From assembly GCA_051294905.1 (NCBI GenBank), contig CM119382.1, forward strand, positions 9,424,001 to 9,488,000: a DNA stretch of 64,000 nucleotides, written 5' to 3'. The notes under the pieces were generated by a model. That model saw nothing but the letters and a program-made list of their open reading frames with translations, had not been told where the DNA came from and did not search any database. Within the stretch, counting starts at the first letter, position 1. Each line of letters begins with the position of its first letter. The DNA is from Botryllus schlosseri (Eukaryota). Shown here piece after piece: positions 57,004 to 64,000 of this stretch. A program made the position numbers and the translations under genes.

Positions 57004-58007
57004 TCATTTCATTATGAAGATACTATGTTGAAGTTCTGTACCTCCAAGAAGCTAAAAATTTTGAAAAGGTCTCCTCTTTTCAGACTCCCAAAATATGCTA
57101 ACCCTTCAATCTTTTCAATATATTGCAATATTGTAGTGGATTTGATTTTTAAAAAAGATAATTATTAATAATACTCTTTATCAGAGATGCATGGCTGAAT
57201 CGTGGTTTCTCATGATCAAAATCCGGATCCTGTTTCCGCTTGTAATGTTATCCGGAACAAAGGAATCCTGCTCAAAGCTCTGACGCCCTTGCTCTGACTC
57301 AAAGCTCTGACGCCCTTTGTAATTGTGCCTCGAAAATGCATTGCAGTGGTGGTGCAATGATACCGAGCGATTTCAAATTCATACAGAACATCGAAGTAAA
57401 ATGAGTGAATTTAGAAATATAGAATCCTGTTCTGATGCGGATCCTGCACTCGGCTAAACATGCGAATCCGGATCCAATCGTGTTTTAAAAAATATTGTCG
57501 GGTTTGTGTGTAACCTACGGAGGTTAGTTATCTATAGTTAGTGGTGTATGTATAGTGTACCTTAGTAATCTGTAGTGCGAGTGTACGATCTTTATTCCAA
57601 GATACTGCTTGTGTAAATGGAGAAGAACCTCTATCAGGGACAGTGTAATTGATGGCAACGCCATGCACAACTTTCCGTTTAATTTCTCAATTATTCTATG
57701 CACGTAACCCTTCTGTCACGCGCAACTTACTGCCGAAAACAACCATTGTTTCCAGTCTGGTATCAGATGGCCATAGTGTTCCTCAGTGTGTTGAATGCCA
57801 ATGATGGAAGCACTTGTAAGTTATAGCAGCATGCGATTTTTAGTGATAGCTGAGAATTGAGATAGTGATAGCTGCGATGGCTGATTATATCCACGGGGCC
57901 TTGTTATACTGATTAGGCTACGAATATACAATTATTATATATTTTTTATTTAATTCCGCTTAAGTTGTTATAATAGCAAGCTTAAAGTTCCGTGTTATAT
58001 ATGCATT

Positions 58008-59495
58008 ATGTCACAAGTGGAGTGTGATCTTTGCTTCTACCTCGTGAAAAAATACTATGGACGGATCGTGGCGACTGTCGGCCAATTTCTCTGCAAAAAT
58101 AGATTGCAGACGTTGGGTCAAATCATCCACGGGACCAAGCTAAAACCTTCGTTGGTGCGCAAAGCGTTGTGTGTCCTGATCAAACACGGGCTAGTGAATT
58201 TTGCACGGAACAAAAAAAGGATGGAATACAGTTTTGATACCAACGGCACGACGCATATACTCATGATACCTAAAATCATCTATACTACCAAGTCACTTTA
58301 TGGCGATCCCGGTGAGATGATCATCGAAGAAACCCTAATGCATGGCATGATAGAAAAGGACTCCATAATTAATACCGTGAATCGACGCTTGGAGGAGGTA
58401 TCGCCCAAAGTTGAAAATGGTGTTGTAGAGAAAGTTTTCAATGATCTAGTCGCGGCAAGATTTTTAATTTCCGAACCCGTAATTCCATTGGATGATGAAA
58501 ATAAAGAAAAAGCCGGGGACGACGTCGAAGTAGACGTTGGATCTAAAAGAAAAAGAATTTGCAGTGATGATGAGATTGAGAACATTGCTAAAAAAGTTAA
58601 AGTTCTGGACACTTATTCTGTAAACTTTGTGAGATTCAACCAATATTTCCGGGATCAATACATCGTAAATGGAATCAAGCAAAAATTTGGTGCGCACTGC
58701 GGGGAGATCTTACGTGCGATATTAAGAATAAGCGAAGTTACGACATCGCCACAAGCAGAGCGCACCCAACCAATATCAAGCAACGAGATAAGGCAAGCGT
58801 TGCCTGTACATTTAATCATGCCGATAATACACGTGGAGCAATATCTAAACATAATGATCAGCGATCCGGGCAATCTATTACAAAAAATTGAAGAGAGCAG
58901 CAGCAACCTCTATGTGGTTAATCTGAAGAAATGCGTCGAAGCCGTGTGCCAAGCGAACGTGCTGTCTTACATTCTGGAGAGGTATGGCAGCAAGAGTTGC
59001 AGGATTTTCAAACTTCTGTTGCTTAAAAGCCATCTGGAACAGAAACAAGTCGAGGATTTCGCTATGATCCCGTCGAAAGAAGCAAAAGAGCTGTTGTACC
59101 AATTGTGGTCAGATCACATGCTCATTATGCAGGAAATTCCTAGAACTGTCGACCACGCGCCGTCACGGACGTACTACTTGTTTAACGTAAACATCAACAA
59201 AGTCATCAGGACTTTGCTGACTCGATCGTATCGCACGCTGCTGAATCTTTTAGCCCGGCAACGTCACGAGGTAAAATCCAATAAAAGACTAGCGGAAAAG
59301 CAAGCGAGGGTGGAACACATCAAGGTTACGATTGAAAACGCGGACGAAGCTCAGCTGCAAGAGATCGACGAAATGCTGACTCCGGCGGAGCGTGACCAAT
59401 TGCAGAAAATGGAACACTGCCATAATAAGCTTGGGAAAGCGCAAATTCAAGTTTCTAACACGGCGTTTTTATTTTCGTTACATTTGACTTATTAA
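58008..59495 (+). CDS. POLR3C: RNA polymerase III subunit RPC3/C62, intronless, 495 aa
   Basis: N-terminus MSQVECDLCFYLVKKYYGRIVATVG...VRKALCVLIKHGLV; EIPRTVDHAPSRTYYLFNVN and C-terminal coiled region typical of RPC3. Confidence 0.93.
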   Translation: MSQVECDLCFYLVKKYYGRIVATVGQFLCKNRLQTLGQIIHGTKLKPSLVRKALCVLIKHGLVNFARNKKRMEYSFDTNGTTHILMIPKIIYTTKSLYGDPGEMIIEETLMHGMIEKDSIINTVNRRLEEVSPKVENGVVEKVFNDLVAARFLISEPVIPLDDENKEKAGDDVEVDVGSKRKRICSDDEIENIAKKVKVLDTYSVNFVRFNQYFRDQYIVNGIKQKFGAHCGEILRAILRISEVTTSPQAERTQPISSNEIRQALPVHLIMPIIHVEQYLNIMISDPGNLLQKIEESSSNLYVVNLKKCVEAVCQANVLSYILERYGSKSCRIFKLLLLKSHLEQKQVEDFAMIPSKEAKELLYQLWSDHMLIMQEIPRTVDHAPSRTYYLFNVNINKVIRTLLTRSYRTLLNLLARQRHEVKSNKRLAEKQARVEHIKVTIENADEAQLQEIDEMLTPAERDQLQKMEHCHNKLGKAQIQVSNTAFLFSLHLTY

Positions 59496-60129
59496 TATTC
59501 AAGGATGATCATTTCAATACTGTACTGAAATGAATCAATCTGAGCCGTGTCATTTGACTCGATACATGATTTGAAGAAGTAATGGACTCATGAGGGGAGT
59601 GGACTATCTGAGTCATTACTGGGTCATGACTCATGAGCCTGTCCGAAGATCCTACTACACTCAATCATTAGAGGGCTGGTCTGTGCATATCAACCCGGAA
59701 CCGTAGTGTTGATATCTATCTAGACCAGTGGTTTTCAACCGTGGGGTCATTTGCCTTGAGTGTCGCTAAGCTGCTTTTTTTTTCTAAGTAATGAGCTTGC
59801 CAAATTTTTTTGGGGTCGTGGGTGGACCATTTTTAAATCGGAAATTGGGCCATAAGCCCATTACCATAATAGTAAAAGGTTATGAAACAGAAACTCTGGT
59901 CTTGACAGAAACTCTAAAGAGTTTCATTGCATTCAATGCACGTCATTAACCACAGGGCTTAGGTGCTCATACCGCCCAACTCTACGTTATGAACATTGAC
60001 ACATTTTCAAGTATTTTGACCTAGATCATTGTTTCAATGATCATAGGCCCATGCTTTGGGATTAGTGATTTCATTCCAACACTGTTCAACTTCAGTGCTT
60101 TTCAACTACTATTCTGCTGCTGGTATCTT

Positions 60130-60155
60130 AATTATATTTCTTTATTTAGTTTTAG
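60130..60155 (+). promoter_or_regulatory. 3' splice acceptor (possible SL trans-splice site) upstream of EMC4
   Basis: TTTCTTTATTTAGTTTTAG ending 26 nt before the ATG. Confidence 0.55.
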
Positions 60156-60181
60156 ATCATAGCACCACTAATTATATTGCA

Positions 60182-60718
60182 ATGTCGCTTGGAGATAGCC
60201 CAGTCAAGAGAAAGAACGATGGAAAATGGTTCATTGACTTGACGCCCCGGAAAGGAGACAGGAATCGGGAATGCCCAGACCCACCTGGATATTCAACCAA
60301 CAGACAACAACTGAAAGAAGCCTCTGGTGCAGCTAGAGAAGGCCCCGATCAACAATTGATCAACAAAAGAAGCTGGGACATTGCATTAGGCCCTATCAAG
60401 GGATTGCCGATGAATGTGTTCATTATGTATATGTCCGGTAATGCCATATCAATATTCCCAATCATGATGGTGGGAATGATGTTTTTCCGACCTATCCAGG
60501 CCATTATGGGAATAAAAAACACAATGAAAATGCTGGATAGAGCCGACAACAAGCATTTTCTAACATTCGTTTTTGCAATGGGCAATCTCTTGGCTATCGG
60601 ACTGGCCGTGTATAAATGTCACGGAATGGGGTTATTACCGACTCACGAATCGGACTGGCTTGCATTCAAGACTCCGTTGGAAAGGCGAGAATTTGTGTCT
60701 GGCGGATTTTCATTATAA
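60182..60718 (+). CDS. EMC4: ER membrane protein complex subunit 4 (TMEM85), intronless; probable start ATG 60182
   Basis: KRSWDIALGPIKGLPMNVFIMYMSGNAISIFPIMMVGMM..RPIQA and YKCHGMGLLPTHESDWLAF. The ORF-track start at 60056 (TTG) runs through a pyrimidine tract/AG acceptor at 60154-60155. Confidence 0.93.
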   Translation: MSLGDSPVKRKNDGKWFIDLTPRKGDRNRECPDPPGYSTNRQQLKEASGAAREGPDQQLINKRSWDIALGPIKGLPMNVFIMYMSGNAISIFPIMMVGMMFFRPIQAIMGIKNTMKMLDRADNKHFLTFVFAMGNLLAIGLAVYKCHGMGLLPTHESDWLAFKTPLERREFVSGGFSL

Positions 60719-61449
60719 TTCTCGTAACTGTTGAGAGACTGTATATGCTTTATTTTAAAGAAATGATATCTTACCGGCACATGCAGTTGAAACCTTGTTG
60801 CGAACAATACTACTAATATTTTCTATAAGGATTTGTTGTGTCAAAAGGCTATGTGTTGTTTTTGTGTGGGACGAATTGAATGATGTACCATGCAGAGAAA
60901 GATTGGGAGCGGTACTTTTAAGTTATGTGGGTAAAGGACTATGCTTTGATTCATTTTATTACGACTGATAGGCTACCATTCATGTGTTTCTATACGTGAT
61001 TAGTGTAGCAGATGAAATAGAATTTGTGCAATAGGTAATTTAGTTTGTATGTCTGTGCTTCTCAACCTGTCGGTTATATAGGATATGGATATGTATCATA
61101 TAAATATTTGTGTCATTCGGGAAGAATTTTTGCAGTGCGAATGAGTTTCAAAATTCCATGACAAAATGTTACAAAGATAAGTCTCGGGCAAGTTTGTTCC
61201 AGTGTCAATCATTAATTTAGTGAACACTAATTTCTCAGCCGAAAGTTGTACAATTGTAATTTCTTAATTTTGCTTAGCTGCTACATGGTGTTGTAGGCCT
61301 ATATATATTTCACAGTAATCATTATCAATCATTCTATACTATCTTTTGACGACTTGCAGCTAACTCATTTCTAGTGATGTGTTCCTAACACCGCATCGAT
61401 ACTACCAGAGGTGTTGTGATGATTGTTATTGTTACATAGCTGATGTTGC

Positions 61450-61471
61450 AATGTTCTGTGTATCTTTACAG
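61450..61471 (+). promoter_or_regulatory. 3' splice acceptor (possible SL trans-splice site) upstream of SETD9
   Basis: TGTTCTGTGTATCTTTACAG ending 17 nt before the ATG. Confidence 0.55.
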
Positions 61472-61488
61472 ATTGTATTGTTTATGTC

Positions 61489-62235
61489 ATGAGAGTAATT
61501 AAATCATTGTCAAAGAGATGGAGCTCATACAAGTACAGGTTTGTTCCGTGGATGAAGTTGAAGATACGCAGTCAGCCCACGACTAGAGTAATTGATGTCG
61601 AATCTGATAAAGTTGTTCCCGATGAAGAAATTTTTAGTCAGTTAAAAAGCCTTTTTGAGCACTTCAAGTCTCCTGGTGGTTTACAGTCATTTCATAAACT
61701 CAAAATTGCTGAAAGCACGATTGCTGATGCTGGATGTGGAGTATTTTTGACTGGTAGCAACCTTCCTAAAGGTCAAATAGTTGCACTGTATCCTGGAACT
61801 GTGTATCTACCATATGAGCCAATATTTCTCCAGTCGATATATAACAGATACATTTTCAAATGCACAGATGGTGTCCTGATTGATGGTAACAACAGAGGCC
61901 TGTCCAAGACGATATACAAGTCCTGTGAAGGCAGAGATAGAATTAGCCATCTACCAAGTGCTGACTTGACTTGGCTTGACCCAGAACCCACTGTGAGCGT
62001 TAACGTAGGCCAATTTGTGAACAACAGGTCCCTGTCAACGCCTGCCAATGTGTGTTATCAAGAATTTGATTTTCCTGTGGATTTTGACAGGGCCTTGAGA
62101 AAATTTATACCTAATGTATATTATCAAAGTAGGAACTTCCACCGTGGAATGAGAACTGTGGTCCTTGTTGCGGCGCGGGATATTTCCGAAGGAGAAGAGC
62201 TGTTTTCCTCGTACTACACTGTGATTAAATCATGA
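61489..62235 (+). CDS. SETD9: SET domain-containing protein 9 (C5orf35-like), intronless, 248 aa
   Basis: [11 protein letters not shown]-terminal motif; GVFLTG...[12 protein letters not shown]; GQFVNN; [15 protein letters not shown]. Confidence 0.9.
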
Positions 62236-62564
62236 GTTCAATGCTACGCAAATTTATATCACCTAAACTTTTTACTTATGGTAAAAGTTCAGCAACATTA
62301 GCTGAACGACACCTGGCCTCCCAACCAGGCAATGGTGAAGATACCGTGAAGAAAAAGCCAGAGATTGGTGGCGTTTGTTGTATGAGTGGCTGCGCCAACT
62401 GTGTATGGATTAAATACGCAGAAGAATTGCTGGAATACTACAAAAGCGTTGGCGGTGCGGGGGTTGACCAAGTGATGGACGCGATCGATAAAGAAGTTCA
62501 AGATGATAATTTGAAAGCATATCTGAGATTTGAAATCGGCCTCATGCTCAAGAAGAAGTCATGA
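62232..62564 (+). CDS. OXLD1: Oxidoreductase-like domain-containing protein 1; start at ATG 62232 or 62241
   Basis: [19 protein letters not shown] and [12 protein letters not shown] motifs; basic, Ser-rich N-terminus resembling a mitochondrial presequence. Confidence 0.88.
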
Positions 62565-62896
62565 TCGACTGGTGTCTCACGTAAAAGTGAGACAAACAAC
62601 ATCTCGTGTATGCCCAGCCCATGTAACTATACGGGGCATTTCTACAACCTACGCTAGCAGTCCAATTAATGGAGCTAAATATGTGTTCTCGAATTTTTTC
62701 ATCGCATGGTCATGTGACATAACGTTACTGGTCCATACTGCCTCTTCGTGTCATGAAAATGTCCTTGCGGAGGCTGGCTACCGCTCCTTATTGATATTTA
62801 GTGCTTAAGAATCTTTTTCTAACACTCTCTTCAGTTTCTAGTATCCTAAAAGCTTTTTTATTCAATGAGAGAGTAATATAACGCAATGAACTTGGT

Positions 62897-64000
62897 TCAA
62901 GATGAATGTTCTTCTTTCCATTTCTTTTTAGCTTTCATAATAACTTTCCGGTCTAGCACCATGGCGAAGGAGACGGCAAGGATGTAATACAAACTGCACT
63001 TGTACAGTTTCGAAGCACTCGAACTGTTGCCTTTTCTGTATATAGGAAAACAAGTGTTTTTCAAGCAAAAAGCGGCCATCATTATTATGGATGAGAAACT
63101 TACCTATGAAATTTGATGGACTCCGTCATCAGCCACGCATTGAAAGGCGCAGACAGTGCAACAAACGCCCATGACGTTATACCGGTCAAGGGCGCTGCTA
63201 ATGACAAACCGCAGAGCGCGAGTGAGTGTCCGACGGCCACATGCTTTGTTGCCTGCGGATGTGACAACGGGAGCATATGATAATTCCCTCTCGCGTAATC
63301 ATTCTTTCTTCGCCATGCGAGAGCGAAAAAATGAGGAAACTGCCAGCAGTAGAGTATACCGGCCAATATGAATGCCCCTGAATAATAAATAGCTTGGCGT
63401 TCATGAAGAACAATGCAGAAATTTAGCACTGATGTTTCTCACCTGCATCCAATGATCCCGTTGCTGCAGTCCATCCCATTATTGGAGGTATGGCTCCAAC
63501 AATTGAACCCGCCCAGGTATTGAACCAATGCCTTCTCTTCATTGGTGTATATATACCAGCGTATAACAGAATATTGGCCAATCCAAGAGCCGCCGTCAGC
63601 CCATTCACACCTACATCAAAATAGTGTATATCAATTATATGCCTATATCTCTTGTTTATATACTCACCGTAGTATAAACACGATACGCCGACAACTCCAG
63701 ATGATACAGCAAACATAGTAGCATGCAATGGTGTTATAATACTTCTCACTAATGGCCTGTTTTTGGTGCGGTCCATCAGCCCATCATATTCGACTTCAAT
63801 GATCTGAAAGTATCACTTCGCTAATAGACAATGTCTTTTGCATATTTATTGATGAAGATTACTCAAGTTGTGTTCTAACTTACTTGATTGAAGGTATTAG
63901 CAGCGCATGAACATAACACCGTCCCCACTGTAGCAAACAGGAATACTTGCTGATCGAACACTACTGGCGCCAAGCAGTATCCAGCATCGGCTGTCATCGC
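62897..64000 (-). CDS. COX10: Protoheme IX farnesyltransferase (heme O synthase), 3' portion; exons >64000-63884, 63803-63668, 63610-63443, 63377-63104, 63035-62897
   Basis: CAANTFNQ|[68 protein letters not shown]; all junctions GT-AG and in phase. Confidence 0.94.

What the first reader, a model, noticed from the sequence alone, without database searches (positions are those of the whole stretch)
62200..62245. SETD9/OXLD1 junction packs a poly(A)-like signal, stop, start and splice acceptor into 13 nt
Seen: ATT AAA TC ATGA G TTCA ATG. The SETD9 stop TGA (62233-62235) overlaps the OXLD1 ATG (62232-62234). The last SETD9 codons spell ATTAAA (62224-62229). The stop's final A begins an AG (62235-62236) that follows a pyrimidine-rich stretch (TGTTTTCCTCGTACTACAC) and lies 4 nt before a second in-frame ATG (62241). 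Established: ATGA overlaps are typical of prokaryotic translational coupling and of viral termination-reinitiation; ascidian operons are resolved by SL trans-splicing with essentially no intercistronic DNA. Inference: either SL splicing at the stop codon leaves SETD9 with almost no 3' UTR, or a dicistronic mRNA is translated by stop-start reinitiation.
Basis: partly seen in the sequence, partly recalled or inferred. Interest (0 to 1): 0.8.

Follow-up and report, generated by a model that had tools for sequence, protein, structure and literature searches.

The report
Conserved stop-start overlap between two sea-squirt genes
Two unrelated intronless housekeeping genes of a sea squirt (SETD9 and OXLD1) share four letters, ATGA, as the stop of one and the start of the other. 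The overlap is kept in several distantly related sea squirts, and RNA data point to two separate, partly overlapping messengers, not one messenger read twice.

Summary
SETD9 (61489-62235) and OXLD1 (62232-62564) overlap by ATGA.

New here: the ATGA overlap is kept in five other ascidian loci (SETD9 only 50-69% identical). A more distant relative has TAA, 14 nt, then ATG. The order EMC4-SETD9-OXLD1 is also conserved.

RNA evidence:
- Single-cell 3' reads put the EMC4 3' end flush against an AG acceptor 17 nt before the SETD9 ATG. That is a Ciona-type operon junction with no spacer.
- In one bulk RNA run, OXLD1 is covered about 10-fold more than the SETD9 body. Coverage begins 60-130 nt upstream of ATGA, not at 62237.
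- Word shares across runs suggest that the two RNAs vary independently.

Best reading: this is an operon junction that one cut cannot resolve. The OXLD1 mRNA starts inside the SETD9 coding sequence, probably by spliced-leader (SL) trans-splicing. The SL itself was not seen.

Translational reinitiation as the main route is disfavoured. An internal promoter remains a live rival.

The scan's first readers noted similar zero-spacer junctions elsewhere in this genome; none has been verified.

The parts
60182..60718 (+). EMC4 ORF, intronless. It lies upstream on the same strand.
   Evidence: Pfam EMC4, E 8.7e-43. EMC4 also lies upstream of SETD9-OXLD1 in L002 and in one contig whose DNA could not be read.
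60719..61471 (+). EMC4 3' UTR, about 750 nt, ending at or next to the AG at 61470-61471.
   Evidence: run X21: depth of + strand transcripts is 109 in bin 61390-61468 and 6.9 in bin 61469-61547.
61470..61471 (+). Candidate trans-splice acceptor AG for SETD9 (ctttacAG|), 17 nt before its ATG.
   Evidence: Sequence. It coincides with the EMC4 3' end, as in Ciona operons where poly(A) is added to the G of the acceptor AG (PMC1488885).
61489..62235 (+). SETD9 ORF, 248 aa, intronless.
62100..62200 (+). Zone inside the SETD9 coding sequence where OXLD1-containing RNA coverage begins. Candidate acceptor AGs are at 62152-53 (present at the same distance in all relatives, directly after the last upstream ATG at 62149-51) and at 62128-29 / 62131-32. 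A TATA-like TATATTAT, specific to this lineage, sits near 62114-62121.
   Evidence: run X23, total depth: 0.15 (62022-62100), 3.4 (62101-62179), 10.8 (62180-62258), 11.1 (62259-62337). AG and upstream-ATG map.
62200..62219 (+). Pyrimidine-rich stretch. It encodes the conserved SETD9 C-terminal motif LFSSYYT.
   Evidence: Codons TTT, TAC and TAC are invariant in six sequences, but the excess of synonymous conservation is not significant.
62224..62229 (+). ATTAAA hexamer (codons Ile-Lys).
   Evidence: Not conserved: GATAAA in L001-L003, ATTAAG in L005, AATAAA in L006.
62232..62235 (+). ATGA: the OXLD1 start overlapping the SETD9 stop.
   Evidence: Conserved in L001, L002, L003/4/8, L005 and L006.
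62235..62236 (+).
   Evidence: Present. Shared only with L006. RNA coverage does not start here.
62241..62243 (+). Second in-frame ATG (Met4 of OXLD1).
   Evidence: Shared with L001 only. A 93%-identical relative's OXLD1 was called from this Met.
62232..62564 (+). OXLD1 ORF, 110 aa, intronless. The N-terminus is basic, like a mitochondrial presequence, from Met1 on.
62565..62890 (+). OXLD1 3' UTR. The only + strand 3' end detected downstream of the junction lies at roughly 62890.
   Evidence: run X21, + strand transcripts: depth 3.1, 8.5, 6.3, 2.3 over 62654-62950, and 0 over 61864-62337.
62835..63776 (-). Convergent UbiA-family (COX10-like) gene. Its poly(A) site at 62835 overlaps the OXLD1 3' UTR.
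   Evidence: Pfam UbiA. T-run loose end before 62835 and minus-strand depth 29-172.

Best explanation
SETD9 and OXLD1 form the tail of an ascidian operon-type cluster of intronless genes (POLR3C, EMC4, SETD9, OXLD1). The gap between the last two has shrunk below zero, to a 4-nt ATGA overlap. The two proteins are made from two separate mRNAs that overlap each other. The OXLD1 mRNA begins inside the last ~60-130 nt of the SETD9 coding sequence, most likely by SL trans-splicing at an internal AG, so that ATG#1 of the ATGA is its first AUG. The SETD9 mRNA must run on past that point to keep its stop codon. One precursor molecule can therefore yield one mRNA or the other, not both; processing is mutually exclusive. 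Once the overlap formed, ordinary selection on a start codon and on a stop codon holds it in place. Shown: the overlap and its conservation; the operon-type EMC4/SETD9 junction; higher RNA coverage of OXLD1 that starts upstream of the ATGA. Inferred: that the 5' end is made by SL trans-splicing rather than by transcription initiation, and where SETD9 mRNA ends.
For: (1) ATGA is conserved in five other ascidian loci at 50-69% SETD9 identity. (2) The order EMC4-SETD9-OXLD1 is conserved. (3) Run X21 places the EMC4 3' end at the 61468/61469 bin boundary, flush with AG 61470-71 and 17 nt before the SETD9 ATG. There is no AATAAA within 40 nt, as described for Ciona operons (PMC1488885). (4) Single-exon genes are enriched in Ciona operons (PMC2760879), and all four genes here are intronless. 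(5) Run X23 depth is 0-2 over the SETD9 body, 3.4 in 62101-62179 and about 11 in 62180-62337, with no pile of starts at 62237. (6) In every lineage the OXLD1 N-terminus is basic and presequence-like from Met1. In L001 and L007 no AG lies between the SETD9 stop and the last usable Met, so a single cut cannot give two complete mRNAs there. (7) From 62152 to 62231 there is no upstream ATG, and an AG sits 78-79 nt before the OXLD1 ATG in all eight sequences. (8) Some runs hold SETD9-body words only and others hold flank words only. (9) The follow-up to an earlier scan note reports the host spliced-leader tag in this genome (not tested here).
Against: No SL sequence was seen at any site. The coverage step rests on roughly ten fragments from one run, from an individual whose haplotypes diverge from the reference. 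The candidate internal acceptors have weak pyrimidine tracts, whereas the best tract in the window precedes the AG at 62235-36. Runs X7, X8 and X12 hold SETD9-body words without OXLD1 words, so OXLD1 does not always exceed SETD9. Synonymous sites at the SETD9 3' end are not clearly constrained. No SETD9 3' end was located.
Confidence: 0.4

Rival explanations
1. An internal promoter. OXLD1 is transcribed from its own start site inside the SETD9 coding sequence (about 62130-62180) and is not trans-spliced. The two genes are simply nested and overlapping transcription units.
For: The same coverage profile fits. A TATA-like TATATTAT lies about 30 nt upstream of where coverage rises. No SL loose end was listed. 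The two RNAs appear to vary independently between runs.
Against: The TATA-like element is absent from all relatives. The neighbouring EMC4/SETD9 junction is of the operon type. Intronless genes in a conserved order are typical of ascidian operons. [quoted passage not shown]
Confidence: 0.25
2. The SL is joined at 62237, after AG 62235-36. OXLD1 then starts at the second ATG (62241). SETD9 mRNA ends ...UGA-G-poly(A), with a 3' UTR of essentially one base.
For: This is the only cut that yields two complete mRNAs under the Ciona rule, in which poly(A) is added to the G of the acceptor AG. It follows the best pyrimidine tract in the area. The window has lost the AAG found 2 nt before the ATG in all relatives and has AAA instead. 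The OXLD1 of two close relatives (93% and 87% identical) was called from Met4 or later. Runs with SETD9-body words but no OXLD1 words would fit a SETD9 mRNA that ends at the junction.
Against: Bin 62180-62258 is covered as deeply as the next bin, and 62101-62179 is already at 3.4. No pile of starts was reported at 62237. Run X21 has zero + strand 3'-end reads in 61864-62337. The AG and the second ATG are not conserved, and ATG#1 has the better context (A at -3 against T at -3).
Confidence: 0.2
3. Translational coupling. A dicistronic SETD9-OXLD1 mRNA is the main template, and ribosomes that terminate at UGA reinitiate at the overlapping AUG.
For: The ATGA overlap is strictly conserved. In L001 and L007 no single cut can separate the genes. 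Junction-spanning RNA exists.
Against: Coverage steps up about 10-fold between the SETD9 body and OXLD1. Some runs hold one gene's words without the other's. Reinitiation after a 248-codon ORF is inefficient in eukaryotes without a dedicated element (established knowledge). A UGGGA-type motif is not conserved upstream: CGGGA or TGGGA occur at different positions, or not at all. There is no clear extra synonymous constraint. L007 has a 14-nt spacer instead of an overlap.
Confidence: 0.08

Closest known systems
Ciona intestinalis SL-resolved operons without intercistronic DNA (Satou et al. 2006, PMC1488885; Satou et al. 2008, PMC2760879)
   Same: Same-strand neighbours with no spacer. The upstream 3' end falls at the AG of the downstream acceptor, as seen here for EMC4/SETD9. 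There is usually no AAUAAA. Single-exon genes are enriched. Mutually exclusive production of the upstream and downstream mRNA has been proposed.
   Different: In the described Ciona cases the two mRNAs abut and the coding regions do not overlap. Here the ORFs overlap by 4 nt and the downstream mRNA appears to begin inside the upstream coding sequence. The overlap is conserved across deep ascidian lineages. SL addition was not seen here.
Caenorhabditis elegans SL1-type operons (cited in PMC1488885 as refs 42 and 43)
   Same: Little or no intercistronic sequence. The poly(A) site and the trans-splice site coincide, so a precursor gives one mRNA or the other.
   Different: Nematode, a different SL system. 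A canonical AAUAAA is present in the upstream cistron. ORF overlap is not a described feature.
Viral termination-reinitiation at overlapping stop/start codons (calicivirus TURBS; influenza B M1/BM2 UAAUG). From established knowledge, not tested here.
   Same: The stop and the start share nucleotides.
   Different: It needs a dicistronic template and an upstream element complementary to 18S rRNA. Here the downstream ORF has its own, more abundant RNA, and no conserved motif was found.
Prokaryotic ATGA translational coupling
   Same: An identical four-letter overlap.
   Different: A 70S ribosome mechanism in bacterial polycistronic mRNAs. This locus is a nuclear chordate locus, with titin and spliced genes nearby.

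Membership tests
Ciona-type SL-resolved operon lacking intercistronic DNA | Neighbouring genes on the same strand with no intercistronic DNA | tested here: met
   4-nt ORF overlap. The EMC4 3' end abuts the SETD9 acceptor.
Ciona-type SL-resolved operon lacking intercistronic DNA | The downstream mRNA carries the spliced leader, joined at an AG acceptor at the boundary | tested here: inconclusive
   No SL loose end is among the 12 of 37 listed. Coverage starts upstream of the boundary.
Ciona-type SL-resolved operon lacking intercistronic DNA | Poly(A) of the upstream mRNA is added at the G of the downstream acceptor AG | tested here: inconclusive
   Met within bin resolution for EMC4/SETD9. For SETD9/OXLD1 no 3' ends were seen at 62236 in run X21, but SETD9 expression is too low for that to be decisive.
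Ciona-type SL-resolved operon lacking intercistronic DNA | An unresolved polycistronic RNA across the boundary is detectable | tested here: met
   Run X23 reads cover 62101-62258 across the ATGA at depth 3-11. Contigs in X1 and X2 span the whole stretch, though a contig spanning two genes does not show a single transcript.
Termination-reinitiation (coupled translation) | Stop and start overlap or lie within a few nt | tested here: met
   ATGA.
Termination-reinitiation (coupled translation) | The dicistronic mRNA is the template for the downstream protein | tested here: not met
   About 10-fold higher coverage of OXLD1 than of the SETD9 body. Word shares are independent between runs. This rests on limited data.
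Termination-reinitiation (coupled translation) | A conserved upstream RNA element that tethers the ribosome (TURBS-like) | tested here: not met
   No motif is conserved in position across loci. Synonymous constraint is not clearly raised.
SETD9 and OXLD1 protein families | Pfam SET domain; Pfam Oxidored-like (PF09791) with the CCMSGCxNCVW motif | tested here: met

The most novel reading that the evidence does not exclude
A chordate nuclear gene pair is expressed through true stop-start translational coupling: ribosomes finishing SETD9 reinitiate on OXLD1 at the conserved ATGA on a dicistronic mRNA. This contribution would be conserved across ascidian lineages alongside the separate OXLD1 mRNA.
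Probability: 0.1. Interest if true: 0.85.

Novelty: new variant of a known kind. Interest (0 to 1): 0.5.

Why it matters
Ascidian operons are known for having no DNA between cistrons, and how they are resolved remains open (PMC1488885). In this junction the coding regions themselves overlap. In at least two relatives no single cut could release two complete mRNAs. That makes it a natural test case for whether upstream and downstream mRNAs are mutually exclusive products of one precursor, and whether a protein-coding sequence can double as the discarded outron, or the 5' leader, of the next gene. It also matters for annotation. No named tunicate OXLD1 (none from Styela clava, for example) appeared among the OXLD1 hits, although a Styela clava SETD9 is named. 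Standard eukaryotic pipelines may therefore miss the overlapped gene.

Tried and rejected
- Exact look-ups of the window's OXLD1 (from Met1 and from Met4) in public assemblies found nothing.
The closest named SETD9 is from Styela clava, at 54-55% identity.
- Contigs L001-L008 look genomic: L002 carries the intron-bearing convergent gene, and none has an SL or poly(A) at its ends. They give no evidence about transcript ends.
- The X1 and X2 contigs span the whole stretch at a flat depth and were uninformative.
- The loose-end sequence at 62296 proved to be a divergent haplotype of the OXLD1 N-terminus (PKIFTDS-LAER against [16 protein letters not shown]), not a leader.
- The loose ends at 62523 and 60791 match nothing in the window.
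- Synonymous-site conservation at the SETD9 3' end: three invariant codons (TTT, TAC, TAC), but no significant excess.
- A -1 frameshift fusion was considered and dropped. There is no slippery heptamer, and the sequence there is not conserved.
- DNA of the two closest relatives' contigs could not be read because the sample file was too large.

Full report
**What is there.** On the + strand the window carries four intronless ORFs in a row:
- POLR3C-like, 58008-59495
- EMC4, 60182-60718
- SETD9, 61489-62235 (Pfam SET)
- OXLD1, 62232-62564 (Pfam Oxidored-like)

A UbiA/COX10-like gene converges on the minus strand.

**Conservation.** Fetching those contigs showed that the two genes are adjacent in every relative found.
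- The same ATGA overlap occurs in L001, L002, L003/L004/L008, L005 and L006.
- Their SETD9 proteins are only 50-69% identical to the window's, and 50-60% identical between groups. That is about as far as each is from Styela clava SETD9, the closest named protein.
- The last sense codon differs (Ser TCA, Thr ACA, Gln CAA, Ile ATA) but always ends in A.
- The most distant relative (L007, 40-49% identical) has TAA, a 14-nt A/T-rich spacer, then ATG.
- EMC4 lies upstream in L002 and in a contig whose DNA could not be read.

- The AG after the stop is shared only with L006.
- The hexamer is GATAAA in three loci, ATTAAG in one and AATAAA in one.
- The second ATG is shared only with L001.
- All relatives have Lys AAG, which puts an AG 2 nt before the ATG. 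The window has AAA.

**Which start codon is used.** In all lineages the ORF is open from ATG#1. The N-terminus is basic with few or no acidic residues, like a mitochondrial presequence, from Met1 on. ATG#1 has a purine at -3 in every sequence. In L001 and L007 no AG lies between the SETD9 stop and the last Met before the conserved CCMSGC domain. A single cleavage therefore cannot give both a complete SETD9 mRNA and a complete OXLD1 mRNA there. In L002, L003, L005 and L006 it would require a Met 15-41 codons downstream. So in most lineages either the OXLD1 mRNA 5' end lies inside the SETD9 ORF, or OXLD1 is translated from a dicistronic RNA.

**RNA evidence.** One read-laying run was allowed.

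*Single-cell run X21.* Here + strand transcripts appear in the first_mate_on- column. Both the EMC4 and the convergent-gene 3' ends confirm this.
- Depth is 109 in 61390-61468 and 6.9 in 61469-61547. The EMC4 3' end therefore sits flush with AG 61470-71, 17 nt before the SETD9 ATG, with no AATAAA nearby.
- This is the architecture Satou et al. described for Ciona operons: poly(A) on the G of the downstream acceptor AG, usually without AAUAAA (PMC1488885).
- X21 shows no + strand 3'-end reads in 61864-62337.
- It shows a modest pile (up to 8.5) at 62733-62890. The only 3' end detected downstream of the junction is therefore about 330 nt after the OXLD1 stop. There it overlaps the minus-strand gene's poly(A) site at 62835.

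*Bulk run X23.*

| Region | Total depth |
|---|---|
| SETD9 body, 61548-62100 | 0-2 |
| 62101-62179 | 3.4 |
| 62180-62258 | 10.8 |
| 62259-62337 | 11.1 |

- No pile of starts is reported at 62237.
- If most OXLD1 RNAs began at 62237, bin 62180-62258 could reach only about 3.
- OXLD1-containing RNA is thus about 10-fold more abundant than SETD9-body RNA in this sample, and it begins roughly 60-130 nt upstream of the ATGA.
- Mapping dropout is unlikely to explain the low SETD9 coverage. Other runs keep more exact words in the SETD9 body (0.61) than in the flanks (about 0.35).
- Caveats: the numbers amount to about ten fragments. The individual carries divergent haplotypes. Only 12 of 37 loose ends were printed, and none is an SL.

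**Word shares across runs.** I compared the shares for 61300-62800 with those for the SETD9 body 61560-62150.
- Runs X7, X8 and X12 hold 14-26 body words and at most 1-3 words elsewhere.
- Runs X10, X11, X13 and X14 hold 10-16 words of the larger stretch but fewer than 3 of the body.
- If these are RNA libraries, which is only guessed, the two RNAs accumulate independently. That again argues against an obligatory dicistronic mRNA. It also warns that OXLD1 is not always the more abundant of the two.

**Candidate 5' ends.**
- Between 62152 and 62231 there is no ATG.
- The last upstream ATG (62149-51) is followed at once by AG 62152-53. That AG derives from the Arg codon of the conserved [MI]RTVVLV motif and lies 78-79 nt before the OXLD1 ATG in all eight sequences.
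- Its pyrimidine tract is weak.
- A TATA-like TATATTAT about 30 nt upstream of the coverage rise is specific to the window's lineage.
- The data cannot separate trans-splicing from initiation.

**Mechanism.** The best-supported picture is an operon-type junction compressed to a negative spacer. Two overlapping mRNAs arise as alternative products of one precursor. The OXLD1 mRNA starts within the SETD9 coding sequence, probably at an SL acceptor. The SETD9 mRNA reads on through the ATGA. Its own 3' end, near the junction or at about 62890, is not located. Once formed, the ATGA is held by ordinary selection:
- The ATG is the OXLD1 start.
- Any change of the fourth base would extend SETD9 by 20 or more codons in L001.

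Conservation by itself does not therefore require translational coupling. Synonymous sites near the junction show only a hint of extra constraint.

**Comparison with known systems.** The locus works like Ciona operons without intercistronic DNA and like C. elegans SL1-type operons, for which mutually exclusive processing has been proposed (PMC1488885). It differs in that the ORFs overlap and the downstream leader appears to be upstream coding sequence. My literature searches turned up no description of such an overlap in tunicates. That is not proof that none exists. The four-letter resemblance to bacterial coupling and to viral termination-reinitiation is real, but two defining features of that mechanism, tested here, were not met.

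**Verdict.** This is a new variant of a known kind, of moderate interest. First-stage notes of this scan list similar zero-spacer or overlapping junctions elsewhere in the same genome; none has been verified.

Noticed in passing
window 61390-61547: The EMC4 3' end (single-cell 3' reads) falls exactly at the AG acceptor 61470-71 that precedes the SETD9 ATG by 17 nt. This is a Ciona-type zero-spacer operon junction after a ~750-nt 3' UTR, with no AATAAA nearby.
   Followed up: partly
window 62835-62890: The OXLD1 3' UTR and the convergent UbiA/COX10-like gene's 3' end overlap by about 50 nt. The evidence is a poly(T) loose end before 62835 for the minus-strand transcript and + strand 3' reads up to about 62890.
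   Followed up: no
window 62523, 60650 and 60791: Bulk RNA reads join sequences absent from the window: about 99 nt before 62523 (6 reads), 15 nt (ACGATTACTTTTCAG) after 60650 (10 reads), and 94 nt after 60791 (4 reads). They may be divergent haplotypes, chimeras or splice forms.
   Followed up: partly
window 62259-62296: A second haplotype of the OXLD1 N-terminal region carries an in-frame deletion (PKIFTDS-LAER against [16 protein letters not shown]). The EMC4 3' UTR has variants or indels every 20-30 nt. Heterozygosity is very high.
   Followed up: no
window 57950-62564; L002 3573-5860: All four same-strand genes (POLR3C, EMC4, SETD9, OXLD1) are intronless. The order EMC4-SETD9-OXLD1, and the convergent COX10-like gene, are conserved in a relative that is only 55% identical in SETD9.
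   Followed up: partly
protein hits: A Styela clava SETD9 is named in public databases, but no named tunicate OXLD1 appeared among the OXLD1 hits. The overlapped downstream gene may be unannotated in tunicate genomes.
   Followed up: no
L007 740-805: In the most distant relative the two ORFs are separated by a 14-nt A/T-rich spacer with no AG. The nearest AG is 52 nt upstream of the OXLD1 ATG, inside SETD9, and there is no upstream ATG for 152 nt.
   Followed up: partly
window 61469-61547: Bulk RNA coverage of the first ~60 nt of the SETD9 ORF (about 6x, all from one read orientation) is higher than that of the rest of the ORF (0-2x). This may be read-through from EMC4 or an alternative EMC4 3' end near 61550.
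   Followed up: no
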